This document shows, one piece after another, positions 498-36,472 of a DNA stretch of 64,000 nucleotides (positions are counted from its first letter, which is position 1; each line of letters begins with the position of its first letter). The DNA is taken from positions 170,632 through 234,631 of IMG/VR virus record IMGVR_UViG_3300029258_003221; one strand, given 5' to 3'. Position numbers and translations under genes: made by a program. Under the pieces are notes generated by a model that was not told the DNA's origin, did not search any database, and worked only from the letters and a program-made list of their open reading frames with translations.

Positions 498-499
498 AT

Positions 500-22920: not shown

Positions 22921-23418
22921 TCAGATATTGGCCATGCAACCAGTTTTCAGCCATGTTCTCATATAAGTAACAAGCAAAGAGACTTCAGCTTTGTTAAGAG
23001 AGACTTCTCTCGTCCCAATTAACATTGCATCACCCTGTTGCCGAAGAATGTTTTGTGTTCCATGTTTTGGCAAATAACAACGCCATTCAAGAGCTTGGTT
23101 ATCTGACCAATTCCATTTTTCCAAAGCATCAACAAGTTCTGCAATTTCTTCACGATTCAAATGATGATCGTCGCCAACCCACAAAAAACTACTACCGGGT
23201 CTATCAAAAGAATCTTCGTAATCACCGATAGCAGAAGATTGTGCAACAACACGCCACCCATCAAAGCCATCACCTTTCATGAGGTACTCGAAATGACGAT
23301 CACTTTCGAGAAGAACCATGTCTATTTCAAGTTCTGTTGTTTCGGTATTGCGTGTTTTTGCAGCAGCAACGACACACAACAAAACTATCATGGCAACAAT
23401 AAGTGGTTCAATCGACAC
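22921..23418 (-). CDS. hypothetical protein with N-terminal membrane anchor
   Basis: PLIVAMIVLLCVVAAA hydrophobic segment. Confidence 0.75.
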   Translation of the reverse strand: MSIEPLIVAMIVLLCVVAAAKTRNTETTELEIDMVLLESDRHFEYLMKGDGFDGWRVVAQSSAIGDYEDSFDRPGSSFLWVGDDHHLNREEIAELVDALEKWNWSDNQALEWRCYLPKHGTQNILRQQGDAMLIGTREVSLNKAEVSLLVTYMRTWLKTGCMANI

Positions 23419-23429
23419 AATAATTCCCT

Positions 23430-23630
23430 TCAGAACATAGAGTGCATTGGATTTCGACTGCGATTAGATTCTGCCGCAGACAGAAATTTATTGATTGCTT
23501 CATCAAAGTCTGCTTGACTCACTCCCAAGTCTGCACAGATATCTGCTGCCCGATAACATGACAGAGCAATCAAATCACCGCTCATCACATTCTCTGTTAA
23601 ACCTTGCAGGAGGGACAAAAGGATCACCAT
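23430..23630 (-). CDS. hypothetical protein
   Basis: start set at ATG 23630. Confidence 0.55.
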   Translation of the reverse strand: MVILLSLLQGLTENVMSGDLIALSCYRAADICADLGVSQADFDEAINKFLSAAESNRSRNPMHSMF

Positions 23631-23931
23631 GTTTGTCCGCATTTTCTCGGAGGATTGCTCGTCGATCAGCGTTGAAAAGGGTGCTGGTACATCCCTGTCC
23701 AAACGCTGGACAGAGGTACCAGAGTGGTTGCTTAACGATCTCGTCGTAGATTCCGCATCCGAATCTGGGGTTTTCTTCTTCATCGGATGTGATCTCCACC
23801 AAATGCTTGCAAGCTGATTTATCCTCATTCCACTCACCGTATGGACATGGTGCTGTACGACAGCACATCCCTGATCCAACACATGACTGGACGAGGACAT
23901 CAAGATTCAAGGGATTCCTCGAACTGGTCAT
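23575..23931 (-). CDS. cysteine-rich metal-cluster protein (YkgJ-like)
   Basis: SCVGSGMCC...PC...C...CGIY...CP...GC. Confidence 0.6.
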   Translation of the reverse strand: MTSSRNPLNLDVLVQSCVGSGMCCRTAPCPYGEWNEDKSACKHLVEITSDEEENPRFGCGIYDEIVKQPLWYLCPAFGQGCTSTLFNADRRAILRENADKHGDPFVPPARFNRECDER

Positions 23932-24439
23932 ATTGTGCCTCAAATTCCAAAGGAGTCAGTGCAGCAGCCCATTGCGGCATTCCCTCCCAAGAATAAGTGC
24001 AAGGCCATGGCATTCCTTTGCCGTTCTGAATTCCCTCTATTCCATGAATGAACAAATTATCAGTATCGTATTGTGTCCCACAACCACTGGTTTGTGGCTC
24101 TGGAAGTTTGGGGTCGGTGTCATAGAATTTGCCATTCAGATCTACCCAACCTGCCCGATCAAATTCTTCACCGCCAATCATATCGCCTTTACCAACAGCA
24201 AAGGCATAGTCTCTATACTCACGTTCCTCGATTTTAACAAGGTGTCCGTAAGTATCGTTGTCAGCAAATTCATCAATTGCATCACTGGGTGAATCAGCTT
24301 CAACAACAAAGTATGAAGCTTCAAAACCCATGCTTACGGCAATCAACCATGTTTTGCCAAACCAGTCACCGGGGTTGATGACTGGAGCTGTAATCTTCTG
24401 GCCGTTGAGCGTGCCGTGGGCTGTAACTGGTCGAGACAT
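23900..24439 (-). CDS. hypothetical protein
   Basis: 179-aa ORF. Confidence 0.75.
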   Translation of the reverse strand: MSRPVTAHGTLNGQKITAPVINPGDWFGKTWLIAVSMGFEASYFVVEADSPSDAIDEFADNDTYGHLVKIEEREYRDYAFAVGKGDMIGGEEFDRAGWVDLNGKFYDTDPKLPEPQTSGCGTQYDTDNLFIHGIEGIQNGKGMPWPCTYSWEGMPQWAAALTPLEFEAQYDQFEESLES

Positions 24440-24641
24440 TGGGCTTCCCTTTCCATCCTTCCAATTGACGCTTCAACTGCATTTTGAGTGCAAACAGTTG
24501 CTTGTCGTCAAGCATGTTAGATTGGTCAATAGCAAAGACCAATTTCTCTGCCATCTCATAGTTGAGTGAAAGATTGATATCGAGTGGTGTTTCGATATTG
24601 AACCTTGGATTTTCTCGATCTCTATCGGTAGTCATAATCAT
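24366..24641 (-). CDS. hypothetical protein
   Basis: 91-aa ORF. Confidence 0.6.
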   Translation of the reverse strand: MIMTTDRDRENPRFNIETPLDINLSLNYEMAEKLVFAIDQSNMLDDKQLFALKMQLKRQLEGWKGKPNVSTSYSPRHAQRPEDYSSSHQPR

Positions 24642-24643
24642 TT

Positions 24644-24993
24644 TTAGCTTTCAAGGGATCTTTGTACTGCTCCGGGAGTCAGTTGATCGGAATTGGAATC
24701 GAGTACCAGTCCCTCAGTGTACCCGAATGGAAATTTGTGTTGGGTGTCCTTGATGACAAAAAGATGATACTGATTTGAAGTGTCAACTACCCGACTTTGT
24801 GCCGGGTACAATTCAACAGCTTCATTCTCTTCGCCAATCAACTCATTCTTGATTTTCATCATATGCCGCCAATCATGTCGTGGATGACGATCCATTGACT
24901 TAATTGACAACCACCACATTTCAGGCCAACCCTCCGAGATCGGCTGAAGAACACTGGCACACCGTTTGAACACTCCGTAGAGACCATTTTCAT
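24644..24993 (-). pseudogene. 3' part of IS-interrupted gene (WLSIK...HDWR...KNELIG...AVELYP...YHLF family)
   Basis: frame is open up to the IS left end with no native start; joins 26406..26523 in frame. Confidence 0.8.
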
Positions 24994-26405
24994 CTAATTT
25001 GCGGGCAGGAAACCCCTACGGCGAAGCCGCTAGGTTGCAAAGCGAGTGAGCGTAGCGAACGAGACTGCAACCTAGCCTCTTTAGGGTAGTGGGAGGAATG
25101 CCCGCCTCCAAAATAATTAGGACAAAATTGAAATAATTTACGGCAAAATCTGTTTCTACCTACTCTATATAAGAGTGGTATATGAAACAGATAAGAACCG
25201 TTAAACTGCAATTGAAAGTTGATAGCACAATGTTCAAGCCAACGCTTGAGGCATACACCAATGCTTTCAACTATGTATGTCAAACTGCTTGGGACAACCA
25301 AGAGTTTAACGGAGTTCGTCTGCACCACCTGACCTATCACCAAGTCCGTCAAAATACAGGACTTAAAAGCCAACTTGCCATTTCTGCCAGAGTCAAAGCA
25401 ACTGAAGCACTTGCGGCAGTCCAAGCAAGAAAGAAGAAAGGAAAGAAAGTTTCCTGTCCTCAAAGTAAATGCTCGGCAATTCGCTATGATGACCGAAGTT
25501 TGACGATTGACTTTGCTAAACGAACCATCAACATCTTGACGCTGGACGGCAGAGTCAGACTTCCCATCTTTGTTCCCAAATACTTTGAGCAATATCTTAC
25601 TTGGAAACGCTGTTCGGCAGACCTTTTCCAAGTCAAAGGTAAAACATTTTTGCATATTGTATTTGAGAAAGAAACCGAAGATGTTGTGCCTAACGGGAAG
25701 TTCGTGGGGATTGATCGTGGCATTAAAAAGATTGCTGTGGTTAGTGATAATAGGTTCTTCGGTGGTAGAAGAATTAAACAATTGAGTGAACGATATGAGA
25801 GGTTGAGGGGACAACTTCAAAGCAAGAAGTCCCGATCCGCAAAAAGACACTTGGCTAAAATCAGTCGAAGCGAACGGCTTATGCGGAAGGACATCAACCA
25901 TTGCATTACCAAACAAATTGTTGAAGGTCTTGAAGAAGGAACAACCATTGTTCTTGAAAAACTGACTGGTATTCGTGGTGGAGCAAGGAAACTTAACCAA
26001 GAACAAAGACTTGAAGGTAAAAAAACTTTGCGAAAACCACAACGCAAGGAAGTGAACAAGTGGAACTTCTTTCAGTTTGAGCAATTCCTTGCTTACAAAG
26101 CGATGGCTAAGAATTGCCAAGTTGTGTTTGTTGACGCACGATACACCAGCCAACGCTGTAGCAAGTGCGGACACATACACAAAGGCAATCGCCATAAGCA
26201 AAGTAAGTTCAAGTGCAGGAATTGTGGTTTCCAACTGAATGCAGACCTCAACGCTAGTAAAAATATCGTACTCAAATATCTGGACGCTACAAGCTATCCA
26301 GATTGGGCAACTGTCAATTTGCCTAACGGCGGCTTAACGGCTGCTAATGTTCCCGCTTAAAGTGGTGCAACAAGCCCCGCCGTCTTTAGCGGCGGGGTAA
26401 TTGAC
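24994..26405 (+). mobile_element. IS200/IS605 family, TnpB-only (IS1341-like) element
   Basis: left-end hairpin GCGGGCA...TGCCCGC (25001-25105); right-end hairpin CCCCGCCG/CGGCGGGG ending TTGAC at 26405; no tnpA; left boundary after (T)TCAT inferred. Confidence 0.9.
25182..26360 (+). CDS. tnpB: RNA-guided endonuclease TnpB
   Basis: RuvC-I GIDRG, RuvC-II VLEKL, zinc finger CSKCG/CRNCG, RuvC-III NADLNAS all intact. Confidence 0.95.
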   Translation: MKQIRTVKLQLKVDSTMFKPTLEAYTNAFNYVCQTAWDNQEFNGVRLHHLTYHQVRQNTGLKSQLAISARVKATEALAAVQARKKKGKKVSCPQSKCSAIRYDDRSLTIDFAKRTINILTLDGRVRLPIFVPKYFEQYLTWKRCSADLFQVKGKTFLHIVFEKETEDVVPNGKFVGIDRGIKKIAVVSDNRFFGGRRIKQLSERYERLRGQLQSKKSRSAKRHLAKISRSERLMRKDINHCITKQIVEGLEEGTTIVLEKLTGIRGGARKLNQEQRLEGKKTLRKPQRKEVNKWNFFQFEQFLAYKAMAKNCQVVFVDARYTSQRCSKCGHIHKGNRHKQSKFKCRNCGFQLNADLNASKNIVLKYLDATSYPDWATVNLPNGGLTAANVPA

Positions 26406-26421
26406 AATACTCTACATCATC
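26200..26421 (+). ncRNA. TnpB omega/reRNA (5' end approximate); guide = flank AATACTCTACATCATC
   Basis: TnpB reRNA is known to derive from the element right end plus ~16 nt of flank. Confidence 0.6.
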
Positions 26422-26523
26422 TGGCAGGATCATAGGGTTGCCATCAAGATAAACAACCCTTTCCCTTTCAAACAGTTTCCAATGAAGTCCTTTGGGTTTT
26501 TTCTTTTTGCCACGACGTGTCAT
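26406..26523 (-). pseudogene. 5' part of IS-interrupted gene
   Basis: AGGA SD; MTRRGKKKK...DDVEY runs into the IS right end. Confidence 0.8.
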
Positions 26524-26531
26524 GTTGTTCC

Positions 26532-26903
26532 TCAATAAAAAAGTACAGCAATCAGAACCATGACAATGCAACCAAAAAAACAAACAGAAAACACCATTTT
26601 TGAATCAGAGTCTATTTCAAACTTAGAAACTGTTTCAGAATTAAACGAAGCTGTTTGGTAGCCTCTTTCCAAAAGCTGTTTGAATTTTATCGTGCGAATT
26701 TCTTCTTCTGGAATTCGAGAAATGATATGAGCATTGTGTGCTGGTGCGTCCCAGTCAGGAACAGGTGACCAAAGTTGAGTTTTTAAATAAATGTCCCACC
26801 AAGGATATTCAAATGGATCATAATCAGTGAGATCTTCAGGAACTTCAATCAATGCTGCTTCAGCATGAGGCACCAATAATTCCGGGTGCGTGATCATTGT
26901 CAC
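26532..26903 (-). CDS. hypothetical protein with C-terminal membrane anchor
   Basis: hydrophobic C-terminus VFSVCFFGCIVMVLIAVLFY. Confidence 0.7.
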   Translation of the reverse strand: MTMITHPELLVPHAEAALIEVPEDLTDYDPFEYPWWDIYLKTQLWSPVPDWDAPAHNAHIISRIPEEEIRTIKFKQLLERGYQTASFNSETVSKFEIDSDSKMVFSVCFFGCIVMVLIAVLFY

Positions 26904-27499
26904 TCCTTAGTAGGTGTAACAACACGAACTCCCTTCCGGGTTGAATGGTAGTAAATTGATTCTGCAAATTCCTTTGCTGTGTAGTCTGTGAAAGTGCCCC
27001 CTGCTTTCTGTAAAAAATTCCTTGCCATGGTTAAACTCGGCATTGGTTCAGTACCTTCAGTCTCAGTGGCAAGAATACAAACGATTTCCCATTCACAATC
27101 AGTAGATCGCTCACCGCCATTTTCCACAAGGGCCTTAGCACTGTAACAAACGATTTCACAGAACTTAGCAGGTGTCCCCGTGAAACCAAGTGCCTTTGCA
27201 TCATCAAGGGTGATGTATGTTTCAATATACGGATCTTCCCCTTTCTGTCGATAGGTCACCCGTGCTTGAACAGGCATTCCTTCCCGAAGGGGCATACTTG
27301 GAGGACAGAAAAACCCATCAGCTTCAATAGGCACAAGCACCTTTCGGTGTATGCCAGTTTCACCTGTACCGGGAATTCTCTTATCGAAATTCTGCTGAAT
27401 TCGATCAATGACTTCATCTTCTGAGATAGTGAAGTAAGAATGACCTGAACTCGGCTGATGTCGATCACGAGCAAATTGTGACCATCCGATAGTTTGCAT
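26900..27499 (-). CDS. DUF3228-like protein
   Basis: VCYSAKAL...EWEIVCI...EPMPSLTMARNFL..AGGT resembles the DUF3228 pattern. Confidence 0.55.
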   Translation of the reverse strand: MQTIGWSQFARDRHQPSSGHSYFTISEDEVIDRIQQNFDKRIPGTGETGIHRKVLVPIEADGFFCPPSMPLREGMPVQARVTYRQKGEDPYIETYITLDDAKALGFTGTPAKFCEIVCYSAKALVENGGERSTDCEWEIVCILATETEGTEPMPSLTMARNFLQKAGGTFTDYTAKEFAESIYYHSTRKGVRVVTPTKE

Positions 27500-27515
27500 A
27501 TTTTTCTTTCGTGTT

Positions 27516-27549
27516 AAACAAAAGGGGGCAGGCTGCCTGCCCCCTTTGT
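27516..27549 (-). terminator. intrinsic terminator (possibly bidirectional)
   Basis: AAAGGGGGCAGG/CCTGCCCCCTTT stem with T-run. Confidence 0.85.
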
Positions 27550-27567
27550 ATGACCAACCGGCAAATG

Positions 27568-27984
27568 TCAGGCAACTCCCTTGAGCTGTTCCTGAACAGA
27601 TTCCACCGTCTCAATGAGACCCTGAAGCTCAGTGATCCGTGAGCGGACAGCACTGATGCCACCCATGCTCTTGACTTCGGCCAGAGCCTTGCCGAAATCA
27701 GTCACGGGATTTGTTGCAACAACCTGACGCCGACGACGAGTGGTCGTTGTCTTGGTTGACTTACCCGGCTTCCTGCCACGCTTGCCAATTGGCATGTTGC
27801 GTGACTTCTTCCAGTCGTTCTTGAACGAATTGAAGCGATTTGTTCCCTTTCCATGGTCACCATAGAAATACTCGTAAACAGTCTTGCCCTTCTTCTTCAG
27901 ATGGGATTCTGCTTCACTGCGGGTCAGATCGCCCTGAGCATCGAGTACGTCGAACAGAGCTTGCGTTGTTGGGCCTTTGGCCAT
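27568..27984 (-). CDS. small basic putative DNA-binding protein
   Basis: K/R/T-rich linker GKRGRKPGKSTKTTTTRRRR; start set at ATG 27984. Confidence 0.6.
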   Translation of the reverse strand: MAKGPTTQALFDVLDAQGDLTRSEAESHLKKKGKTVYEYFYGDHGKGTNRFNSFKNDWKKSRNMPIGKRGRKPGKSTKTTTTRRRRQVVATNPVTDFGKALAEVKSMGGISAVRSRITELQGLIETVESVQEQLKGVA

Positions 27985-28079
27985 AATTACACCTTCGCTT
28001 TCTGATGCGAATTTTCGTGGAACCGCCACGATAAACGGGCCGCTGTCCAACATTGGTCACGGCGTCAGGTTCTCTCAAC

Positions 28080-28109
28080 ATTCTACGATAGTGGTTTTGA
28101 TTGTAAAGC
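28080..28109 (-). promoter_or_regulatory. sigma70-like promoter, GCTTTACA-N14-CGTAGAAT
   Basis: TTTACA-16-TAGAAT; same extended motif at four other sites. Confidence 0.75.
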
Positions 28110-28206
28110 AAAACTCACTAAGATTTTCACCAAGAAGACATAAGTTGTAATTCTACAAGAACTTACAGGAGTAAGAATTCTTAGTGATTTTCTCTTGTGT
28201 TAGATT

Positions 28207-28602
28207 CTACAAGGGTGTCTTATATGGGAAAGTTTCATCGTCCCAAGTATTTGTTCCGTAAATGATTCCCTGATGAAACTTTTCGATAGCCCACGCACTC
28301 CATCTTTGGAAATAAGCAAACGCTTCTTCCATCGAATCATAGCGACAGCTTTCAATGAATTCATCAGTCCTCGACGAAGGCATTGGCTCATATTCCCAAC
28401 ACCCATCTTTGGCAAGACAAAGACTACCATACTTTTTGATAGCCCAAAGATCATCGCCTTCACGTTGTTTGTAGCGATCAATCGTCACCTCTTCACGATA
28501 CTCTTCTGAACATTCAGTGGCGAGCTTTCCGTGCGTCACAGGCATATGGCCTGCTATGAGGCTTTTGATTCGATCTTCAATGTTGGGAATCATCAAAATC
28601 AC
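28207..28602 (-). CDS. hypothetical protein
   Basis: 131-aa ORF. Confidence 0.75.
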   Translation of the reverse strand: MILMIPNIEDRIKSLIAGHMPVTHGKLATECSEEYREEVTIDRYKQREGDDLWAIKKYGSLCLAKDGCWEYEPMPSSRTDEFIESCRYDSMEEAFAYFQRWSAWAIEKFHQGIIYGTNTWDDETFPYKTPL

Positions 28603-28810
28603 CTCCAGAGACTTTCTTTGTAACCAATCTCAATCCAATCAATGCGACTGAAAGAAAGATTAGAAAAGAGTCAAAGAGAAAAACAAAACCCAAAATCGCT
28701 TTATCTTGTCGAGATTGAATTTTGATCTCTTCGACATTGACCTGCATATAAAAAAGCAAGCCAATCATAATGAACACGGAAATGCCCAGAATGGCAAACA
28801 GTTGTTTCAT
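28577..28810 (-). CDS. two-TM membrane protein
   Basis: two hydrophobic segments. Confidence 0.75.
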   Translation of the reverse strand: MKQLFAILGISVFIMIGLLFYMQVNVEEIKIQSRQDKAILGFVFLFDSFLIFLSVALIGLRLVTKKVSGGDFDDSQH

Positions 28811-29337
28811 CGGTCAAGCTCCCAAACAGTCACATTAACGATGTCGGAAACCCATTGGTCTTGAACCATTTCTTCTATGATCGCCCAGTCGCCTCCCGCA
28901 AGGCCACTCCCAAATTTGGGAGTGATGACCTCGATGTTGTGAACTGGGTAATGCTGATTGGAGAAGTTTCTCAGCATCATTCCAATCCCTTCGATACACT
29001 TGTAGAGCGGACCATATTTCACTGGCTTAGGATTGTCAGAGCTGACCGTGTCCCGTTGACCAATCATGTTGATGGCATAAGTCAGCGAGAACAAATCATC
29101 TCCACGCACCTTGACGGTCTGAAACTGTCCCAGCTTAAAAGGCTTACCGCTTTCAATGTCGATGCCCAAACGATGCCAATCATGATATCGTTGCTTGACC
29201 TGTGGCCAATGCTTAGCAACTGCACCAGCAAAGCCTGAGCCAAATCGGTCAACGTCATTACAACAATGAGGAACCAGTTTAATTGTTGGCGTGGTCCAAT
29301 CTGTTGAAAACAGATCGCCTTGTTTGTATTCAATCAT
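28807..29337 (-). CDS. macrodomain protein (ADP-ribose binding/hydrolase, Poa1p/TARG-like)
   Basis: MIEYKQGDLF...HCCN...FGSGFAGAV...PKFGSGLAGGDW. Confidence 0.9.
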   Translation of the reverse strand: MIEYKQGDLFSTDWTTPTIKLVPHCCNDVDRFGSGFAGAVAKHWPQVKQRYHDWHRLGIDIESGKPFKLGQFQTVKVRGDDLFSLTYAINMIGQRDTVSSDNPKPVKYGPLYKCIEGIGMMLRNFSNQHYPVHNIEVITPKFGSGLAGGDWAIIEEMVQDQWVSDIVNVTVWELDR

Positions 29338-29906
29338 CAGCTTTCTCTCCGTTCCATGGGCATTGTGGGTTGATGAGGATCTCCCGACCAATCAGGATCA
29401 TTATAATCCTCATCATACCCTTCGTCATAATCGTCGTAGTCATCATAATGGATGGGAACGCCATTTTCATCATAATCAACATAGTCACAGCCACCCCATC
29501 TTACGATTTTGGAATCCGGGTTAAAAGGCCAAGGTAAGTAATGGTCCCAAAATGGAGACCCACCTTCTTCCAGAAACTGTTGCCACCCGGCATCGTTTTT
29601 CATTTCAACAGTCGATACCAGATGAAAGAAAAACCATGGAATGGTAAGTGTCAAAAACGAACCAATCAGAGGGGCAATAATGCCAACGCCGATAACCATG
29701 TCAATTTGATCTTCCAGAGTACAAACCCCATCAGTATAGCTCCAACCGACTTTTCCCTGTGGGGGCATAATCATGTAAGTCCAAAGTCCACAAATTAGAA
29801 ATCCGGGCACACAACATCGCAGGAACATCACGATACGTGGTGTCCGATTGCGACGACCAGAATAACCATTGTGGTGACCATAGTCACGTTGATTAAGCCA
29901 AGACAT
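29337..29906 (-). CDS. membrane protein with acidic D/Y-rich tail
   Basis: two TM segments; YDDYDDYDEGYDEDY. Confidence 0.7.
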   Translation of the reverse strand: MSWLNQRDYGHHNGYSGRRNRTPRIVMFLRCCVPGFLICGLWTYMIMPPQGKVGWSYTDGVCTLEDQIDMVIGVGIIAPLIGSFLTLTIPWFFFHLVSTVEMKNDAGWQQFLEEGGSPFWDHYLPWPFNPDSKIVRWGGCDYVDYDENGVPIHYDDYDDYDEGYDEDYNDPDWSGDPHQPTMPMERRES

Positions 29907-30262
29907 TATGATACCTCTTTTAACTCCGACCAATCAATACCCAAAAGTGCAAAGTTCTGAGTATTGTTTTGATTGTAATCCAAATACAAACGAGCAGCTT
30001 TCATCATGAAGACTTGAAGTCCGATCAAATCCACTGGATCATCACCGAAAACTTCTACTTCAACTGGTGCTACAAACTTACGAGGTGTCCCATTTGGATT
30101 GATGATTTCTTTTAAATCGATAGTTCTTGGATCTGAAATGAGCATTGCGTCGTCTTCATTCATAGACCAACCATGACCAGTCCAAAACTCATTTTCATTT
30201 GCTGCAAGAATGAATCGACGATGCTGCAAACTTCCTTTAGGGACCAAAGACAGTGATTTCAT
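29906..30262 (-). CDS. hypothetical protein
   Basis: 118-aa ORF. Confidence 0.75.
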   Translation of the reverse strand: MKSLSLVPKGSLQHRRFILAANENEFWTGHGWSMNEDDAMLISDPRTIDLKEIINPNGTPRKFVAPVEVEVFGDDPVDLIGLQVFMMKAARLYLDYNQNNTQNFALLGIDWSELKEVS

Positions 30263-31761
30263 ATGTTGTTCCTTCTTTCAAATCTTGATGCGAAACCATG
30301 GAATTTCTCTGGTTGGTCGAGTGCCAGACGCTTGAGCTTAGCTCCCAGAGAGCAACACTCCTCGTGAAAATCATCTGTTGCATGATTTTTCACCTTGTCA
30401 TGTGCAAGCTCATGAATAATAAGCCCGTCAAGACGAGGCGTGAAGCCTTCTTCAAAGAACTTGTTGCCCATGGTGAACTTGTTGTAGTCCAGCACATTAT
30501 CGCCATAACAGGCAATCCATGATCTGCCAACAAAACTATGACACATCACAAACCGAACAATGATACCATGGTCCAGCAATTCTGAACCCAACCATCGAGT
30601 GTATTCCTCGATTAAACCCATAGCAGGTGTCCACTTTTCCCTTGGGATCACTTCCACTGGGGTTGCATTTGGGTCATCACTGTACGCTCCTTTGCCCTCC
30701 ATGGGAAAAGCCTGAGAACTGCTGAAAAGGGCACCTGCCATCTTGGCATTAGCTCGCTGACCTTTTGTCAGTCCATGTGACGAAATCATATTGTATCCAG
30801 CCGTAATGGCTGCACCGTTTGCATCCGGGTTAGTTGGGTCAATCGATACCCTCTTAGGCCCAAACCGTTTAGTCATAAACGAATGTGTGGCCTCATCTGA
30901 ACACCGTTCATCACTGGACGCTTCATTGACCCAAGCTTCAGTGGTATCATCCTGTTCAATTTTTTCATGCATTTCATTGAGCACATGAGTACGAACAGCT
31001 TTAAGATAAGAAGGGGTCACATTGTCACGATCTACATTCAGAGGAACTTTCTGCTGAATGCTGTAATGCCATTTATCCCCAGTTTCTACAACCGGAATAC
31101 CCAATTCATAGAGACTCGGCACCTCATCAGGAAGAACATCAAAAATCTGAATTTCACACTTTCGTGCAGATGTACGAAGATCTTCACCGATCTCAGTGAA
31201 AAGAGTTTGCTCAAAAGTGTGAATTGGCTTTCTGCCTTTGATTTCATCACCATTAACAAACAGTTTTAGACCGGGACGAACAATGATTTTGTTCATGTAC
31301 TCAATAAGTTCAGTGTACTGCTGACGAGTACATTCCATGAGTGCCCAGAACTCTGTTCCATTGTCTCGCTTCCGACGAGGGTATTCATGTCGCCCTTCAT
31401 CATTGAATTCAACTGTGCCGCTTGTTGTGTGAACACGAGCTTCTTTGCAGAAAGCCAGAGCCATCTTACAGCCGACATTGAACCGACCAGCTTTAGTAGG
31501 ATCATCTTTCTTCTCAGATGGAGCATAGACTGTCCAAGCATGAGACAGATCAGTGTAACCCGGACCATTGTCAATGACGCTGATTTCAATCAATGGCTTT
31601 CCGGGGATTATCGCCACCTTGATATGACATTCAGTTGCCTCTGTGTCCATGACGTTTTGATAAAGTTCTGCCCCGATGATCCCAAAAGAACGTCTTTCAA
31701 CGAGTCGCTTGGCGACCATACGAAGACCATCTTTGTGTGCCGTAAACCAATTCTTACTCAT
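30259..31761 (-). CDS. GHKL (Hsp90/MutL/MORC-like) ATPase fused to C-terminal HExxH domain
   Basis: ELYQNVMD, IDNGPG, GRFNVG motifs; IIHELAH near the C-terminus. Confidence 0.8.
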   Translation of the reverse strand: MSKNWFTAHKDGLRMVAKRLVERRSFGIIGAELYQNVMDTEATECHIKVAIIPGKPLIEISVIDNGPGYTDLSHAWTVYAPSEKKDDPTKAGRFNVGCKMALAFCKEARVHTTSGTVEFNDEGRHEYPRRKRDNGTEFWALMECTRQQYTELIEYMNKIIVRPGLKLFVNGDEIKGRKPIHTFEQTLFTEIGEDLRTSARKCEIQIFDVLPDEVPSLYELGIPVVETGDKWHYSIQQKVPLNVDRDNVTPSYLKAVRTHVLNEMHEKIEQDDTTEAWVNEASSDERCSDEATHSFMTKRFGPKRVSIDPTNPDANGAAITAGYNMISSHGLTKGQRANAKMAGALFSSSQAFPMEGKGAYSDDPNATPVEVIPREKWTPAMGLIEEYTRWLGSELLDHGIIVRFVMCHSFVGRSWIACYGDNVLDYNKFTMGNKFFEEGFTPRLDGLIIHELAHDKVKNHATDDFHEECCSLGAKLKRLALDQPEKFHGFASRFERRNNI

Positions 31762-32134
31762 TTTCAATCCTTTTCCAATCATCTGGACCTAATGCCTTGA
31801 TTTCTTCAAGCAGTGTCAACACTTGTTCGTTGACGCTTTTGTAACATCCGGTGTCATGTTTCCACTCAAAGATACACATTCCATACACTGTGGAACAATG
31901 ACCTTCCTCATCAATTGAACCTATGACATATGGATGAATCTTAATTGATCCGACATACAAAATATCATAGGGTTCTCCGATACACAGCATCAATCTTTTA
32001 ATGTATCTCAGAGCGTCCATGACCACATCATTCAATTCATCAGAATTTGTGGCGTAGAGCTGATCAAATGATCTCCCACGAAGCCCCATATCTGTTTGAT
32101 GCACAGCCTCAACGCTGAGTTCGTATGTGTTCAT
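31754..32134 (-). CDS. hypothetical protein
   Basis: 126-aa ORF. Confidence 0.7.
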   Translation of the reverse strand: MNTYELSVEAVHQTDMGLRGRSFDQLYATNSDELNDVVMDALRYIKRLMLCIGEPYDILYVGSIKIHPYVIGSIDEEGHCSTVYGMCIFEWKHDTGCYKSVNEQVLTLLEEIKALGPDDWKRIENE

Positions 32135-32145
32135 TATTGGGTGTC

Positions 32146-32814
32146 CTAAACAGTTTCAGCTAAACAGATCGAAAACCCTTCGTAACAGTATCCATTCCGA
32201 CCTTCCAAAAAGACCTTGGCACCATGGTAGTCCTGATCAGACAGGATGCGTTCTAACTCTTCTTCCTGTCTCATACTTTCCCTGTGTGAAGCTAATTTTT
32301 GGCGGTAATCACCCCACTGCTCTTCCACAGTCTTCTTGAGATGAGGATCATCCTCAAATTCATCTGGCCTGTGTTTTGGTTGCTCTGGTTCTTCGCTATA
32401 AGATTCGTAGTACCCTTCTTCTTTTCTCTCCTGAATTACTTTCAAGCAAGCACGACCAATATGCTCAGTGGTGTTCGCTGCAAAGTATCGTTCGCCATGT
32501 TTTTCTCGCAGAACGATAATGTACTGTCGATGCAAAGCCGAAACCAAATTGTCCCACTTCTTCTGAGAGAGAACCAACTTATCATCTGTAAGCGGATCTT
32601 TATTAGAAGATTGAAAATTAAGGAGTGAAGGGACAGGAACACATATGCGTACCCACTTGTCTGCTATTGGACAAAATTGCTCAAGCTTAAACCGACGAAC
32701 GTGATGTTTGTTATGTCGAACGTATGGATCAATTTCAACAAGACGAAACTTACCACTTTGATTTTCATTAAATTCACTGATCGTCATTCCAGCACTCCTA
32801 AAGGCATTCGCCAA
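32146..32814 (-). CDS. hypothetical protein
   Basis: 222-aa ORF. Confidence 0.75.
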   Translation of the reverse strand: MANAFRSAGMTISEFNENQSGKFRLVEIDPYVRHNKHHVRRFKLEQFCPIADKWVRICVPVPSLLNFQSSNKDPLTDDKLVLSQKKWDNLVSALHRQYIIVLREKHGERYFAANTTEHIGRACLKVIQERKEEGYYESYSEEPEQPKHRPDEFEDDPHLKKTVEEQWGDYRQKLASHRESMRQEEELERILSDQDYHGAKVFLEGRNGYCYEGFSICLAETV

Positions 32815-32840
32815 TTTACTTCGATTTCATTGGGTGTCCT

Positions 32841-32871
32841 AAAAGAAGGGGCAGGTTTCCCTGCCCCTTAA
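32841..32871 (-). terminator. intrinsic terminator
   Basis: AAGGGGCAGG/CCTGCCCCTT stem + T-run. Confidence 0.85.
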
Positions 32872-32872
32872 A

Positions 32873-34033
32873 TCATGCAGAATGTTTGGCGTATCGCCGC
32901 TCATCCATATATTCTGCTGTCACCTGATCACCGGCATGTTCAATGCCACGTCGATCCAGTTCGGCAAGCCCCGCTCTTGTTAGTGTGATACCACGACTGG
33001 TAGATACAACATACGGACCATTGCCTGCAACAGACATCAATGGAGGCAGAATCACACGCTCTAACGCCTCTGCCTTACAGTTTGCCACTCTTTGGAGATT
33101 ATCCTTGGAGATTGGACGACTGCCCAATGCTTCAAGAATCTTGACTTCTCGACGGTCCATGCCGAACTCATCAAGTCCCAGATTGTCAGCAACGATTCTG
33201 GCAGCAGTCTGCCAATCATTGCCGTGCTGATTTTTAGTCATCTCCATAAGTCGAGCGAAATCCTTCGCCAAACGAGGAACAATTCGATATTTGGCAACTG
33301 CGTTACACGCTTCTTCGGAGAAGTGCGGGTAATTAAGCTTGATGATCTGAGCGATCTCTTTCTTACCAGCAGGTTGCCATCTCAAAGTTGTACCCAATCG
33401 CTGTGCGAAAGCATCGAACAACTTACCTTCCTCAGTGGTAGCACCGACCCAACAAATTTCTCGGCAGTCCACTTTGAAAGTTCTAGTTTTCTTTCCTGTG
33501 CCGGTCGTGATCTTCATCCAACCGTCACCATACTCCATGCCGTTCAGAAGACCACCCTGCATGAGTGATTTACTTAAAGCATGTGCCTCATCAAAGAACA
33601 GAATACACGGAGGAATCTGATACTCATCTTTGGCAACTTCAACGATCTTGATGCCCTTCTTAGCAAAGGTTTCACAGATCAATTGAAACAAGTTGTAGGT
33701 GCTGGAAAGAGCATCCGCCTGTACAAAGACAAACGGAATACCAATAGTTTCGGCAAACTGCCGAACAATAAAAGTCTTACCTTGGCCAGATGTCGCATAA
33801 ATTGCAAATGACATCCCACGACAACTGTGATTCGGAAGACCAAATGCGTTGAATGCAAATGTCTTGAGGGTGCTCATATTACCCTCATTTTCCTTACTCA
33901 CAATTACTTTGTTGAGTGGACATTTTGGATGAGCCAAGGCTTCACGGATTTCTTCATCAGTTGGCCTATCTGGAAAGCCGCCCGGATTGAAGAACTGAAT
34001 TTGAAGCTGCTTAGCATATTTTTTCATTAACAT
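32873..34033 (-). CDS. ruvB: RuvB-like AAA+ ATPase
   Basis: Walker A ATSGQGKT, Walker B FFDEAH, VGATTEEGKL, PRLA, GLDEFGMD...E.VILPPL...TSRG winged-helix tail; start uncertain. Confidence 0.75.
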   Translation of the reverse strand: MLMKKYAKQLQIQFFNPGGFPDRPTDEEIREALAHPKCPLNKVIVSKENEGNMSTLKTFAFNAFGLPNHSCRGMSFAIYATSGQGKTFIVRQFAETIGIPFVFVQADALSSTYNLFQLICETFAKKGIKIVEVAKDEYQIPPCILFFDEAHALSKSLMQGGLLNGMEYGDGWMKITTGTGKKTRTFKVDCREICWVGATTEEGKLFDAFAQRLGTTLRWQPAGKKEIAQIIKLNYPHFSEEACNAVAKYRIVPRLAKDFARLMEMTKNQHGNDWQTAARIVADNLGLDEFGMDRREVKILEALGSRPISKDNLQRVANCKAEALERVILPPLMSVAGNGPYVVSTSRGITLTRAGLAELDRRGIEHAGDQVTAEYMDERRYAKHSA

Positions 34034-34089
34034 CCCTTTCTGTCGTTGAAACTTTCTTGTTACGACTTTGATGGGTGTCAACTATAGAT

Positions 34090-34983
34090 TTAGGCCACTT
34101 TCTCCTTAGCAAACACGTCTTTCACTTTTTTCAGTGCTCGATCATAGGCGTAAGTTGATGCCATGCGGCTCACAGAATGCTTCTTGGATACTTCTGATTT
34201 TTTGCCGCCACCCAGAACAGTATAAAGAACATCACGCTCCAGTTCTGACAAACCGACTTCTTCAATCACAGCTCGGACCTGATCGATTTCCATGGTCACT
34301 TCGCCATCGAAACTGCTGTAACTGTAACTTGATACAAAATCTTCCCAAGCTACCTCTGGCCCATCAACTGCCACGGCTAACGCTGAAAAGCATTCTTCAC
34401 GATCAGAATCATTGATCTCCAGTTTATTTGCGGCCTGCTCAAAAGAAAGACCTTTAGACATAAGGTCTCGCAGATCTGGGAGCATACGAAGAATTCGTTT
34501 TTTGACGCTTGAAAGGAAATGATCAGTGCGAATGTAATCGATCATTCGATTCCGAATGGCATTACAGGAATATGTATCAAATTTCGCATTGCCGCTATAG
34601 GCAAACATCGAATCGGAGATTGCCCAAATCCCCTCTTGAATGAAATCTTCAATATCGACAGCACGATGACGTAATCTGTGTGCTTTGTAGAAAGGCAGAA
34701 CAATACCGGGCACAAGGCGACAATAACCCTGAAGGACAGGATACTCAATTTCTTTGACAGAGTCCATCGTCTGTTTGACGTAATCTGTCAAAGTCTGAAG
34801 AGTTCCATTGTGATATCTACGCCGAAACTCTTTGATAGAGGGATTTTCGGTGTCAAATTCTTTTTCTGCCGCCGCACGAATAATTGGCTGTGCGTCAGCC
34901 ATAATTGAAGAATATTTCTGTTCTTCTTCTTCTGAGAGAGTACGAGGTTTAATACACCCAATCATGAGGAGATTCCCTTTCAT
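34090..34983 (-). CDS. sigma-70 family sigma factor
   Basis: region 2 EDFIQEGIWAI...KFDTYSCNAIRNRMIDYIR; region 4 LSELERDVL...SEVSK...ALKKVK. Confidence 0.8.
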   Translation of the reverse strand: MKGNLLMIGCIKPRTLSEEEEQKYSSIMADAQPIIRAAAEKEFDTENPSIKEFRRRYHNGTLQTLTDYVKQTMDSVKEIEYPVLQGYCRLVPGIVLPFYKAHRLRHRAVDIEDFIQEGIWAISDSMFAYSGNAKFDTYSCNAIRNRMIDYIRTDHFLSSVKKRILRMLPDLRDLMSKGLSFEQAANKLEINDSDREECFSALAVAVDGPEVAWEDFVSSYSYSSFDGEVTMEIDQVRAVIEEVGLSELERDVLYTVLGGGKKSEVSKKHSVSRMASTYAYDRALKKVKDVFAKEKVA

Positions 34984-35112
34984 CGATTACGGAAGTTATT
35001 TTCTTGATGGGTGTCTGACATGACAAACGCTGGCCATGTTCACATGGATCACCACATTCATAGAAAACTGTCTTCGAGTCGATTTACAGGGTGTCCTCTT
35101 TTGCACCAAATA

Positions 35113-35147
35113 GAAAAAGCCGCCAACCAGTTTCCCAGTAGACGACT
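35113..35147 (-). terminator. intrinsic terminator
   Basis: AGTCGTC/GGCGGCT G-U-containing stem, GAAA loop, T5 run. Confidence 0.6.
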
Positions 35148-35169
35148 TTTTCTCGGGGTGACGTTCCCT

Positions 35170-36363
35170 TTATTTCTTACGAACCCGAAGAGTTTTCGCT
35201 TCTTCCGCCTGAATCCTTTTTTCGGATTCTTCGCAAGCCTGTTCATACGTGATGTTCATACAGGCTGCCACACCTTTGCGGAATTCAGCATTGTCTTCAT
35301 CTGTCTGGTCGAACAATTTTTGCATTTCCTTGAGCGGAATCGGTTTCGCACGAGTTGATTGGCGTGCAGTTGATTCGCTGTAATGCTGCTCACCCAGAGC
35401 TTTTCGTGTAGCAGCAGTTAAGGTCATGCGACCAGATTCCAAATCAGCCCGGTCTTTATCTGTAAGACCAGTTGCTGGTTTGATGACTTCACCTGTTTCT
35501 TCGTCGATCCTTGCTTCTTTTCGAGGACGAAGCAGAGCCTCACGGTTTCTGACCGTGCCTTTCTTCTTCTGTCCGGGATAAAGATACTCAGCAATTTCTG
35601 TTAGGGTCCACTTCTTACCAGAAGCAGGATTGATTCTGGATCGGAAGTTTTTGTAGATCGCCGCTTCCTGAAGAGCAGTCAATCGTTTGTTGCTGAGATT
35701 TTCTTCGACTGAAATCAGGAAGCCTTCATCATCATTCACCTGTTTATTGGTGGCGATGACTTCTGCTGGATAAATTTTGGCACCTTCAACTTCATCCGCA
35801 ACATCAACACGACTTTTTGCGTGGTTGTACAAAGTTGCTGATGTTCGTCGATTTCCTGCCAACAGAGTGAAGTTGTAATTACCATCACTCAGTTTATTGC
35901 CTTTACGCACCATTACCGGATGGAACTGCCCATAACGGGCAAGACGACGTGCAAATGCAACAATAGATGAAGCAGGTGGGGTCACCTGTTTGGAATCTTC
36001 GTCCTCTACCGTTGCCACGTCCAGTTCCATTGGCTCACATTCATGTGTTTCAAACAGACTGACAACTTGTCGAACCACTTCAATGTCTTCTGACAGAGCC
36101 ATGTGGATCAGTGAATGTTCTTTGTCTGAAGAATCAACCAGCTTGTAACCAAGAGCAAACAGATTTTCTGGTTCATTCCGACAGTTATCCACTGCTGTGA
36201 TTCTTGACAGTGGAATCGTCCAATGGTCAATTTTGACCTGCTTGGCCTTTGGACGATTGTCAGATTTCTTTGTTCTTGTCTTAGCTGGCTTCTTCGTTTC
36301 GTCAGCTTGTTGGGTGTCAACAACTGTTTCTTCAGCAGGAGCTTCAGCGGTTTCGGCAGCCAT
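35170..36363 (-). CDS. ParB/Srx-family (ParB-like CTPase) protein with HTH
   Basis: GQFHPVMV...LLAGNRR (GxRR) and VEENLSNKRLTALQEAAIY...TLTEIAEYL; GGAG SD before ATG 36363. Confidence 0.8.
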   Translation of the reverse strand: MAAETAEAPAEETVVDTQQADETKKPAKTRTKKSDNRPKAKQVKIDHWTIPLSRITAVDNCRNEPENLFALGYKLVDSSDKEHSLIHMALSEDIEVVRQVVSLFETHECEPMELDVATVEDEDSKQVTPPASSIVAFARRLARYGQFHPVMVRKGNKLSDGNYNFTLLAGNRRTSATLYNHAKSRVDVADEVEGAKIYPAEVIATNKQVNDDEGFLISVEENLSNKRLTALQEAAIYKNFRSRINPASGKKWTLTEIAEYLYPGQKKKGTVRNREALLRPRKEARIDEETGEVIKPATGLTDKDRADLESGRMTLTAATRKALGEQHYSESTARQSTRAKPIPLKEMQKLFDQTDEDNAEFRKGVAACMNITYEQACEESEKRIQAEEAKTLRVRKK

Positions 36364-36418
36364 TGCGGCAAATCTCCATGAGATGTTTTGATGAAAACTA
36401 CACAGTGCCACAAAAAAC

Positions 36419-36437
36419 GACACACCGTGTCACACGG
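36419..36437. promoter_or_regulatory. overlapping inverted repeats at the ParB-like gene transcription start (candidate operator)
   Basis: GACAC-ACC-GTGTC (36419-36431) and CCGTGT-C-ACACGG (36425-36437), immediately downstream of the -10. Confidence 0.55.
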
Positions 36438-36442
36438 CTGTT

Positions 36443-36472
36443 ATTCTACGTCAGTTCCGTGGTCTGTAAAGC
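36443..36472 (-). promoter_or_regulatory. sigma70-like promoter GCTTTACA-N14-CGTAGAAT
   Basis: TTTACA-16-TAGAAT. Confidence 0.75.

What the first reader, a model, noticed from the sequence alone, without database searches (positions are those of the whole stretch)
35170..36472. ParB-like CTPase gene closes the motif domain and has a GACAC inverted repeat at its own promoter
Seen: the last motif copy (36312) is inside this gene's 5' end. Between its -10 (36443-36448) and start codon lie GACAC-ACC-GTGTC and the overlapping palindrome CCGTGT-C-ACACGG, built from the same 5-bp core. The protein has the ParB GxRR motif (LAGNRR) and ENL...HTH. No parA is present in the window. Established: ParB/Noc/KorB proteins bind specific sites, clamp and spread using CTP, and often autoregulate. 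Inference: an orphan phage ParB could use non-palindromic GACACCC half-sites to coat, silence or position a 36-kb early region and repress itself through the palindromic operator.
Basis: partly seen in the sequence, partly recalled or inferred. Interest (0 to 1): 0.78.

Follow-up and report, generated by a model that had tools for sequence, protein, structure and literature searches.

The report
Orphan phage ParB beside promoter array
The gene is a genuine but very divergent ParB/KorB-type DNA-clamp protein of a 235-kb phage, but the repeated GACACCC motif it was thought to bind behaves like the phage's own promoter signal, so the proposed "ParB coats the region" mechanism is probably wrong.

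Summary
Window 35170-36363 (-) encodes a 397-aa protein. Pfam and a single-sequence PDB search miss it, but a family profile and an AlphaFold model place it in the ParB/Noc/KorB family, with the N-terminal CTP-pocket domain and an HTH domain. NPR, GxRR and the box III Asn are invariant. No ParA is present.

The gene is a self-contained unit. It has a host-type promoter (one of six of a class in the window), a leader carrying the palindromes 36419-36437, the gene, and a strong terminator.

GACACCC occurs 36 times, all on one strand. Its core GACACC recurs in relatives with lineage-specific 3' extensions, sits about 8-60 nt before start codons, and restarts transcription after the ParB terminator in five genomes. 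It is therefore a core promoter. Its likely reader is the sigma factor encoded next door or another phage RNA polymerase, not ParB half-sites.

The array runs at least 9 kb past the window's left edge. In most relatives copies also lie upstream of ParB.

The palindrome is not conserved and is weak statistically. A GTGTC(G) leader element (antisense GACAC) does recur in 5 of 12 lineages, so a control site is plausible but its binder is unknown. ParB's role is inferred: most likely a KorB/BisD-like regulatory clamp.

The parts
35170..36363 (-). ParB/Noc/KorB-family gene, 397 aa. It has a disordered basic N-tail (1-43), an N-terminal CTP-pocket domain (44-227) carrying a family-specific insertion of about 70 residues, an HTH DNA-binding domain (228-336) and three C-terminal helices (341-396).
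   Evidence: PHROG 3264, E 1.8e-9. The family profile hits Spo0J, ParB and Noc at 3e-11 to 2e-7. AF2 mean pLDDT is 79.8. The top 31 Foldseek PDB hits are all ParB family. VIA Z is about 11, with 1.8-1.9 A rmsd over 95-98 residues.
36443..36470 (-). Host sigma-70-type promoter of the ParB gene: TTTACA, 16 nt, TAGAAT. It belongs to a class of six in the window.
   Evidence: A sigma-70-type promoter also lies upstream of ParB in L002, L003, L005, L010, L017 and L018.
36419..36437 (.). Two overlapping palindromes in the leader, 5-3-5 and 6-1-6. On the sense (-) strand they include GTGTCG at 36423-36418.
   Evidence: GTGTC(G) recurs in ParB leaders of 5 (4) of 12 lineages, against 0.72 (0.2) expected.
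36364..36442 (-). 79-nt leader, rich in sense-strand TGTG (4 copies), with SD GGAG at 36377-36374.
   Evidence: 11 TGTG and 0 CACA in 303 nt of ParB leaders from 5 genomes, against about 1.4 expected. Other early leaders in the window have 0-1.
36312..36318 (-). Right-most GACACCC copy of the array in the window, inside codons 16-18 of ParB.
35112..35153 (-). Intrinsic-terminator hairpin with a U-run, directly after the ParB stop codon.
   Evidence: dG -28.5 kcal/mol, z -3.8. Equivalent hairpins follow ParB in L002, L003, L005 and L010. G-U pairs make it strand-specific, so it acts as RNA.
35009..35095 (-). Two GACACCC copies (35089-35095 and 35009-35015) between the ParB terminator and the sigma gene. 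The second lies 50 nt before the sigma ATG.
   Evidence: The terminator-then-motif order is conserved after ParB in five genomes (with 36).
34090..34965 (-). Phage sigma-70-family factor (regions 2-4). It is the most likely reader of GACACC(C).
   Evidence: Pfam Sigma70_r2 2.7e-7. PHROG 351. The profile matches SigA, RpoD and FliA over regions 2-4. It sits next to or near ParB in 7 loci.
32873..34027 (-). RuvB-like AAA+ ATPase, syntenic with ParB and sigma.
   Evidence: Pfam AAA and RuvB_N. Same order in L002, L007, L003 and L005.
275..36318 (-). Array of 34 GACACCC copies (55 GACACC), all co-oriented with the genes. It is a phage-specific core-promoter class and continues beyond window position 1.

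Best explanation
SHOWN. The gene encodes a divergent member of the ParB/Noc/KorB family, with the ParB N-terminal nucleotide-pocket domain followed by an HTH domain. It belongs to a roughly 235-kb phage known only from metagenomes, and no ParA partner is present. The gene is an isolated transcription unit: a host sigma-70-type promoter, a 79-nt leader, the gene, then a strong intrinsic terminator. GACACCC is not specific to this gene. It is the core of a phage-specific promoter class (GACACC plus a lineage-specific 3' extension), placed about 8-60 nt before start codons and directly after the ParB terminator.

INFERRED. Host RNA polymerase makes ParB early. The GACACC(C) promoters are read by phage-directed transcription machinery. 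The best candidate is the sigma factor encoded just downstream, which would then also drive its own gene. An unseen phage RNA polymerase is the alternative. ParB binds CTP through the conserved NPR, GxRR and Asn residues. The two catalytic glutamates are not conserved across the family, so hydrolysis is probably slow. ParB most likely acts as a KorB/BisD-style DNA clamp that regulates or organises phage DNA around the early-to-middle switch. The leader element (palindromes and GTGTCG) is the likely site where the ParB promoter is shut off. Whether ParB itself or the GACACC-reading machinery binds there is unresolved.
For: ParB identity. The invariant residues are N60, R62, G170, R172, R173 and N222.

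Orphan status: and no ParA Pfam family in the flanks of relatives.

Promoter class: six copies of gcTTTACA-N16/17-TAGAAT. A sigma-70-type promoter is also found upstream of ParB in relatives.

Terminator after ParB in five genomes.

Motif as promoter:
- The strand bias is absolute.
- The core is conserved with different extensions: GACACCCGCTTGA, GACACCTGCTTG, GACACCGGGAAG, GACACCGTCGA and GACACCGCATAG.
- Spacings to the ATG fall in three classes, about 8-11, 18-23 and 40-60 nt. Only a start site about 8-13 nt from the motif's first base fits all three.
- An A is found at +11 in 25 of 36 copies.

Sigma is a complete sigma-70-family protein and is syntenic with ParB.

Precedents for ParB-family clamps that control transcription are KorB (PMC11790492) and BisD (PMC12409273).
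Against: - No transcript, binding or nucleotide data exist.
- Sigma sits behind the ParB terminator and behind GACACCC copies. Its first expression therefore needs read-through, or the weak TTGTCA-17-GAAAAT match at 35026-34998.
- A sigma with regions 2 and 4 would normally need two promoter blocks. Only one conserved block is seen.
- ParB's recognition helix and the motif's 7th base covary. Sigma covaries too, and phylogeny confounds both.
- No palindrome half-site is shared by three or more genomes, so no common parS-like loading site has been found.
- 19 of the 34 copies in the array are intragenic and far from the next start, which is more than a simple promoter role requires.
Confidence: 0.5

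Rival explanations
1. ParB recognises the non-palindromic GACACCC copies as half-sites, coats or silences the block, and represses itself through the GACAC palindrome.
For: ParB and the GACACC core are both conserved across the phage group. ParB is made from a host-type promoter, while sigma lies behind a terminator and GACACCC copies, so ParB is available first. An antisense GACAC (sense GTGTC) recurs in ParB leaders of 5 of 12 lineages. The recognition helix changes (RNRE to RNTH or RSYA) in lineages whose motif has G or A instead of C at position 7.
Against: The motif lies where a core promoter lies. The ATG is only 8-32 nt away in many copies, which leaves no room for a separate promoter downstream. 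It follows terminators. ParB dimers load on palindromic sites in all studied cases. The palindrome arms lack the invariant C6. The palindrome is absent in L002 although its recognition helix is nearly identical. In most relatives motif copies also lie upstream of ParB.
Confidence: 0.1
2. A BisD-like activating clamp. ParB-CTP loads at a palindromic site at the head of the block (36419-36437 in this phage). It slides in the direction of transcription through the 45-kb-plus array and cooperates with the promoter-bound sigma holoenzyme at GACACC(C) promoters.
For: BisD loads at two palindromic bisS sites and spreads about 50 kb along the direction of transcription. It accumulates at 11 promoters that a partner protein marks. 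Here there is an orphan ParB at the upstream edge of a co-directional promoter array, conserved synteny with sigma, a conserved family-specific insertion in the N-domain, and catalytic glutamates that are not conserved, which would give long-lived clamps.
Against: The palindrome is not conserved, and no shared loading site was found. In most relatives ParB is not at the edge of the array. No evidence for a ParB-sigma contact could be obtained with these tools.
Confidence: 0.15
3. A classical segregation or positioning ParB. It would maintain or position the phage genome (carrier state, plasmid-like prophage, replication focus), using a ParA encoded elsewhere in the 235-kb genome or the host's ParA or SMC.
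For: The ParB N-domain plus HTH architecture is complete. Only 64 kb of the 235 kb was inspected, plus about 9 kb more in L011.
Against: No ParA in the window or within 10 kb in relatives. No LG(R/K)GL ParA-interaction motif is seen in the N-terminal tail. No canonical parS. The gene lies among early and middle regulatory genes.
Confidence: 0.15
4. The leader inverted repeat is not a protein operator. It would be either chance or an RNA-level element, such as a 5' stem-loop or a weak attenuator (GACAC-GGU-GUGUC followed by a U6 run).
For: Palindromes of this size occur 1.5 times per kb. The repeat is followed by a T-run and is flagged as terminator-like. L005 and L010 have unrelated hairpins at the same place. 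TGTG enrichment is strand-specific, 11:0.
Against: The leader's RNA fold is not better than shuffled sequence, z -0.43. GTGTCG recurs in four lineages whether or not a hairpin is present.
Confidence: 0.3
5. A DNA-modification helper. Like the ParB-like activators of phage thymidine dioxygenases, this ParB would assist a DNA-modifying enzyme, perhaps the GT-A glycosyltransferase-like gene that diverges from it.
For: There is a precedent for phage ParB-like proteins activating 5mYOX enzymes (bioRxiv 10.1101/2025.08.14.668559). The divergent neighbour 36688-37410 is a conserved sugar-transferase-like protein.
Against: Those ParBs lack the DNA-binding domain, whereas this one keeps it. No TET/JBP family is listed in any flank. 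In L003 and L005 several genes separate the reverse-strand genes from ParB.
Confidence: 0.05

Closest known systems
KorB of plasmid RK2 (a ParB-family CTP clamp and transcriptional repressor)
   Same: ParB N-domain plus HTH, with structural alignment over 174 residues at 3.5 A (8qa9). It acts on transcription rather than only on segregation. Its operator OB is a 13-bp 6-1-6 palindrome, the same geometry as CCGTGT-C-ACACGG, which sits directly after the -10 of the gene's own promoter.
   Different: KorB has IncC (a ParA) and KorA partners and 12 conserved OB sites. Here there is no ParA and only one copy of the palindrome in the window, and the palindrome is not conserved in relatives. Sequence identity is only about 18%.
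BisD of ICEclc (a ParB-like CTP clamp that activates distant promoters together with BisC)
   Same: A mobile-element ParB-like protein without a partition role. It is associated with a roughly 50-kb co-directional block holding a repeated promoter motif that a second factor reads.
   Different: BisD loading sites are conserved 11-bp-arm palindromes, and BisD carries a dedicated activator domain. Neither was demonstrated here, and the partner here would be a sigma factor. This is a functional analogy only.
Chromosomal ParB/Spo0J and Noc
   Same: These are the best sequence and structure matches. Box I (NPR for QPR), box II (GxRR), the box III Asn and the HTH are all present.
   Different: The E of GERR is N171 here (G, A or Q in relatives). 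There is a roughly 70-residue insertion between boxes I and II. No LGxGL ParA-binding motif, no canonical parS and no ParA.
Phage 5mYOX-associated ParB-like activators
   Same: Phage-encoded orphan ParB-like proteins with a conserved nucleotide pocket.
   Different: Those lack the DNA-binding domain and sit next to a dioxygenase. This one keeps the HTH and sits next to a sigma factor.
Single-block phage promoters (the T4 late TATAAATA read by gp55; T7-, SP6- and Syn5-type promoters). This comparison is from memory and is only a lead.
   Same: GACACC(C) is a compact single block close to the start site, orientation-specific and restricted to one gene block.
   Different: No gp55-like or single-subunit polymerase gene was found in the 64 kb. 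The window has no ORF longer than 570 aa. The candidate reader is an ordinary-looking sigma with regions 2-4.

Membership tests
ParB/Noc/KorB (ParB-CTPase) family | ParB/Srx-type N-terminal domain fold | tested here: met
   Foldseek probability is 1.00 for the top 31 PDB hits, all from this family. VIA Z is about 11, with 1.8-1.9 A rmsd over 95-98 residues on Myxococcus and Bacillus ParB bound to CDP or CTPgS.
ParB/Noc/KorB (ParB-CTPase) family | Nucleotide-pocket motifs: box I (Q/N)PR, box II GxxRR, box III (E)NLxR | tested here: met
   N60, R62, G170, R172, R173 and N222 are invariant in 18 family members. They align to GERR and ENLQR of Spo0J and ParB.
ParB/Noc/KorB (ParB-CTPase) family | Catalytic glutamates for CTP hydrolysis (B. 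subtilis E78 and E111) | tested here: inconclusive
   The E78 equivalent is N171 here and G, A or Q in relatives. The E111 equivalent is E221 here but I, A or L in relatives. CTP binding is plausible. Hydrolysis is doubtful.
ParB/Noc/KorB (ParB-CTPase) family | HTH DNA-binding domain after box III | tested here: met
   The profile alignment runs through the Spo0J HTH. Model residues 44-336 align to the N-domain plus DNA-binding domain of Noc and KorB.
ParB/Noc/KorB (ParB-CTPase) family | CTP binding and parS-stimulated clamp closure | not testable with these tools
   Needs ITC or DRaCALA and cross-linking assays.
ParB/Noc/KorB (ParB-CTPase) family | C-terminal dimerisation domain | tested here: inconclusive
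   There are three confident helices at 341-396. No significant structural match was found, with Z about 4 to homeodomain-like folds.
ParABS partition system | Cognate ParA (deviant Walker A ATPase) and the N-terminal ParA-stimulating LG(R/K)GL motif | tested here: not met
   No KGGxGK[ST] in any frame of the window. No ParA Pfam family in the flanks of relatives. No LGxGL motif is seen in the N-terminal tail.
ParABS partition system | Conserved palindromic centromere (parS) | tested here: inconclusive
   No canonical parS. One 13-bp palindrome lies in the leader. No half-site is shared by three or more relatives.
KorB-type autoregulated repressor | Operator palindrome at its own promoter, conserved with the protein | tested here: not met
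   The palindrome is present here, but it is absent in L002 despite a near-identical recognition helix. Other relatives have none, or unrelated inverted repeats. Only a GTGTC(G) element recurs.
Phage-specific promoter class (for GACACC(C)) | Orientation-specific, placed upstream of genes at a fixed range, follows terminators, conserved in relatives | tested here: met
   Actual start sites were not measured.

The most novel reading that the evidence does not exclude
An orphan phage ParB-CTP clamp, made early, loads at the head of a co-directional block of 45 kb or more. It slides with transcription and acts as a mobile co-activator, or switch, for a phage sigma factor at about 50 single-block GACACC(C) promoters. 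This would combine the BisD/KorB principle with the logic of T4 late transcription, where a sliding clamp couples to a sigma.
Probability: 0.15. Interest if true: 0.8.

Novelty: new member of a known kind. Interest (0 to 1): 0.45.

Why it matters
ParB-family CTP switches are now known to do more than segregate DNA. KorB silences promoters, BisD and VirB activate them, and phage ParB-like proteins switch on DNA dioxygenases. This family adds a conserved orphan ParB in very large phages. About 60 cluster representatives are found at E <= 1e-30.

The gene is hard-wired next to a phage sigma factor, at or inside an array of one phage promoter per kilobase. If the two are functionally linked, it would be a tractable example of clamp-coupled control of a viral transcription programme.

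Independently of ParB, the GACACC(C) promoter family gives a ready-made way to map the temporal gene classes of these uncultured phages. It has lineage-specific extensions and near-absolute strand polarity.

Tried and rejected
- Pfam on ParB gave no hit. tblastn against 50,697 phage records gave no match. Single-sequence phmmer against PDB gave nothing. Only the family profile and the structure model identify the fold.
- I looked for a MotA-box or -35-type architecture, with the motif upstream of a separate -10. No consistent TAnnnT lies downstream, and many copies are too close to the ATG, so I rejected it.
- Terminator hairpins directly upstream of every window copy: only 2 of 34 are below the 5th percentile. 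The terminator-then-motif order is firm only after ParB and in L010.
- Shared palindrome half-sites among genomes: none. Canonical parS: none.
- Rfam on the window and L003: no family.
- Covariation of the motif variant with the ParB helix versus sigma region 2: both covary, so it is uninformative.
- The sigma alignment was too divergent to scan viral contigs.
- Co-occurrence could not separate ParB from sigma, because every locus long enough has both.
- The T4-like idea that the AAA+ neighbour is a clamp loader was rejected. It is RuvB-like.
- Resemblances of the motif's reverse complement to T7 primase sites, and of the motif to T7, SP6 or Syn5 promoters, are from memory only and were not tested.
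Full report
WHERE THE WINDOW COMES FROM

The window is the last 64 kb of a 234,631-bp metagenomic viral contig, IMGVR_UViG_3300029258_003221 (also Ga0309772_1000111). Contig coordinate equals window coordinate plus 170,631. Nearly all genes lie on the - strand. The ParB protein has no tblastn match among 50,697 GenBank phage records.

CHECK OF THE OBSERVATION

Reading 35000-36700 on the - strand confirms every sequence statement.

- The ORF starts at ATG 36363, preceded by GGAG, and ends at 35170 (397 aa).
- The promoter match is TTTACA (36470-36465), 16 nt, TAGAAT (36448-36443). It is the best promoter match in the region, 10 of 12.
- The overlapping palindromes lie at 36419-36431 and 36425-36437. 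Each is the only exact copy of its pattern in the window.
- A GACACCC copy sits at 36312-36318, in codons 16-18.

GACACCC occurs 36 times, always on the - strand, and 34 copies fall between 275 and 36318. Shuffles give 5.3 +/- 2.0.

The palindrome by itself is not remarkable. The window holds 96 perfect palindromes with arms of 6 or more and spacers of 3 or less, and about a dozen overlapping pairs.

WHAT THE PROTEIN IS

Pfam gives nothing. PHROGs gives 'ParB-like partition protein', 1.8e-9.

Eighteen homologues at 35-79% identity were found, on contigs of up to 668 kb. Their alignment has these invariant residues:
- N60 and R62 (box I, NPR in place of QPR)
- G170, R172 and R173 (box II, GxRR)
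- N222 (box III, ENL)

The alignment profile hits Thermus Spo0J (3e-11), Helicobacter and Myxococcus ParB, and Noc. The match runs from box II through the HTH. The single sequence hits nothing in PDB.

An AlphaFold2 model has mean pLDDT 79.8. Its best Foldseek PDB matches are exclusively ParB, Noc, KorB, PadC and Spo0J, the top 31 hits at probability 1.0 or 0.99. VIA-align superposes residues 44-227 on CDP- or CTPgS-bound ParB at 1.8-1.9 A (Z about 11). It superposes residues 44-336 on Noc and KorB, including the DNA-binding domain.

So the ParB fold and the HTH are confirmed. 'CTPase' is only half supported. The review PMC10786196 states that GERRxRA contacts CTP and that B. subtilis E78Q and E111Q do not hydrolyse it. 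Here the E78 position is N171 (G, A or Q in relatives). The E111 position is Glu in this protein but Ile, Ala or Leu in most relatives. Binding is therefore likely and hydrolysis doubtful; both points are inference.

Other features:
- A conserved insertion of about 70 residues separates boxes I and II.
- The N-terminal 43 residues are basic and disordered, and no LG(R/K)GL ParA-contact motif is seen there.
- No deviant Walker A motif exists in any frame of the window.
- No ParA family is listed within 10 kb of the gene in relatives.

An exhaustive profile search finds 61 cluster representatives at E <= 1e-30 and 166 at <= 1e-10.

THE GENE'S OWN SIGNALS

The promoter belongs to a class. The pattern gcTTTACA-N16/17-TAGAAT occurs on the - strand at 61358, 51453, 46095, 42931, 36470 and 28107. 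Five of the six lie at or to the right of ParB, where GACACCC is almost absent.

A sigma-70-type promoter precedes ParB in relatives as well. The TTTACA form is seen in L002, L003, L005, L010, L017 and L018. L012 carries a TTGACG-N16-TACAAT version.

Directly after the stop codon there is a strong hairpin with a U-run (35153-35112; -28.5 kcal/mol, z -3.8). Equivalent hairpins follow ParB in L002, L003, L005 and L010. In each case a GACACC(C) copy comes next. ParB is thus a self-contained, host-transcribed unit.

WHAT GACACCC IS

Five lines of evidence point to a core promoter.

(a) Polarity. GACACC is 55:0 between strands in 1-36400. It is 18:0 in the 9.2 kb beyond the window's left edge, so the block is at least 45 kb long.

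(b) Conservation with lineage-specific extensions, almost always on the gene strand:
- GGACACCCnnTAA in L002
- GACACCCAATAG in L007
- GACACCCGCTTGA in L005, L017 and L021
- AACACCCGCTTG in L010
- GACACCTGCTTG in L018
- GACACCGGGAAG in L019, L020 and L023
- GACACCGCATAG in L016
- GACACCGTCGA in L008
- GACACCG in L012

(c) Position. In L005 and L010 nearly all full-length copies are intergenic. Pooled over genomes, the distance to the next ATG falls in three classes:
- about 8-11 nt, where the A of the ATG often sits at +11
- about 18-23 nt, where the SD follows at once
- about 40-60 nt, with a peak at 50-53
Only a start site about 8-13 nt from the motif's first base fits all three classes. An A is found at +11 in 25 of 36 window copies. 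No second conserved block or downstream TAnnnT exists.

(d) Copies follow terminators: after ParB in five genomes, at window 32838, and at several L010 sites.

(e) The invariant A at position 2 and the spacing to the presumed start are what a -10-like element would show. This last point is inference.

A protein bound here would sit on the melting region. That suits RNA polymerase or sigma and does not suit an HTH activator or a spreading ParB.

The natural reader is the sigma factor at 34090-34965. It has Sigma70_r2, and its profile matches SigA, RpoD and FliA across regions 2-4. It is next to or near ParB in seven loci and is itself preceded by two motif copies.

Caveats:
- Sigma lies behind the ParB terminator. 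Its first transcripts need read-through or the weak TTGTCA-17-GAAAAT match at 35026-34998.
- A phage RNA polymerase encoded outside the window is not excluded. The window itself has no ORF above 570 aa.

IS PARB LINKED TO THE MOTIF?

The two GACAC arms of the palindrome read GACACG and GACACA. They lack C6, which never varies in the array.

The palindrome is absent from L002, whose ParB recognition helix (STVRNREAL) differs in one residue from this one (GTVRNREAL). L003 has none. L005, L010, L013, L017 and L018 carry unrelated inverted repeats at or near the same place. No half-site is shared by three genomes.

In most relatives motif copies also precede ParB. So ParB 'closing the domain' is peculiar to this phage and L002.

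Two comparative signals do survive.
- ParB leaders are rich in sense-strand TGTG: 11 in 303 nt over five genomes against about 1.4 expected, with no CACA.
- GTGTC, which is GACAC on the antisense strand, lies 11-36 nt after the -10 in 5 of 12 lineages (0.72 expected). GTGTCG does so in 4 (0.2 expected).
This orientation is otherwise almost absent from these genomes. Both tests are post hoc and the lineages are related, so they are leads. They make a real control element in the leader likely. They leave open whether ParB binds it (in KorB fashion) or the GACACC-reading machinery does (promoter occlusion).

MOST LIKELY MECHANISM

Shown:
- an orphan ParB-family protein
- a host-type promoter, leader and terminator forming one unit
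- a phage-specific core-promoter array next to it
- conserved synteny with sigma and a RuvB-like ATPase

Inferred:
- ParB is made early.
- The array is the next temporal class, read by sigma.
- ParB binds CTP and acts on phage DNA as a KorB/BisD-type clamp around this switch.
- The leader element shuts its promoter off.

My confidence in this package is about 0.5.

Precedents:
- KorB is a clamp turned repressor, and its 13-bp 6-1-6 operator has the same geometry as the palindrome here (PMC11790492).
- BisD loads at palindromic bisS, spreads about 50 kb with transcription, and meets a partner at 11 promoters (PMC12409273).
- Phage ParB-like proteins that activate thymidine dioxygenases lack the DNA-binding domain that this protein keeps (bioRxiv 10.1101/2025.08.14.668559).

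VERDICT

The protein assignment is right. The proposed mechanism, ParB reading GACACCC, is probably wrong.

The gene is a new, divergent member of a known family in an interesting regulatory neighbourhood. The most novel reading still open is a ParB clamp coupled to a phage sigma over a promoter array, with a probability of about 0.15.

Noticed in passing
window 1-36400 (- strand genes): Intragenic GACACCC copies are almost all in one reading frame (17 of 19 as GAC-ACC-C, Asp-Thr). All 16 Asp-Thr-(Cnn) tripeptides in these genes are spelled GACACC-C. 25 of 40 Asp-Thr dipeptides use GACACC, against about 7% expected from codon usage (GAT is twice as common as GAC; ACC is 21% of Thr codons). Outside the block the figure is 2 of 20. 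The 29 Thr-Pro sites that could also carry the motif do so only once. Relatives show no such frame preference.
   Followed up: partly
L011:11312-20540 (contig 161403-170631, left of the window): The motif block continues past the window edge. There are 18 GACACC copies (9 of them GACACCC) in 9.2 kb, all on the gene strand, among small genes of unknown function. GACACCT copies sit 8-11 nt before ATGs, where they overlap the SD.
   Followed up: partly
window 61358, 51453, 46095, 42931, 36470, 28107 (- strand): A class of strong host-type promoters, gcTTTACA-N16/17-TAGAAT. It marks the right-hand 28 kb as the probable early region. One copy (28107) lies inside the motif block.
   Followed up: partly
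window 36688-37410 (+): The divergently transcribed neighbour of ParB looks like a GT-A (GT8-like) nucleotide-sugar transferase by Atlas features. It is 62% identical to the gene at the same place in L002. It has no Pfam or PHROG hit, and its substrate is unknown.
   Followed up: partly
window 48157-49809 (-): An intact 550-aa protein with a WGR domain and a PARP catalytic domain (Pfam 1e-9 and 2e-20). This eukaryote-like poly(ADP-ribose) polymerase architecture lies in the probable early region of the phage.
   Followed up: no
window 55607-58457 and 60033-61295 (-): Two adjacent radical-SAM/SPASM-domain proteins and a ClpX-like ATPase with a ClpX zinc finger. Further AAA+ proteins lie at 43428-45128, and a GHKL-ATPase-like protein at 30259-31782.
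   Followed up: no
L003:11352-11383, L005:11420-11453, L010:11203-11232: The hairpins after ParB in these relatives are perfect palindromes of 30-34 bp. They were read here as terminators, since a U-rich tail follows and then a promoter motif. As long perfect palindromes just downstream of a parB gene, they could also be looked at as candidate ParB loading sites.
   Followed up: partly
L013:483-564 and L005:9876-9937: Very long inverted repeats lie upstream of ParB in two relatives: 37-nt arms at 84% complementarity, and 23-nt arms at 91%. The L005 repeat covers the -35 and the spacer of the ParB promoter.
   Followed up: no
L003:9480-9930: A G+C-rich non-coding stretch of about 450 nt lies between a GACACCC copy and the ParB promoter in the 275-kb relative. 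It has no Rfam match.
   Followed up: partly
L014 (Ga0180432_10000069, 151 kb): The same ParB, 100% identical, occurs on a 151-kb contig from a different sample, so this phage has been sampled more than once.
   Followed up: no
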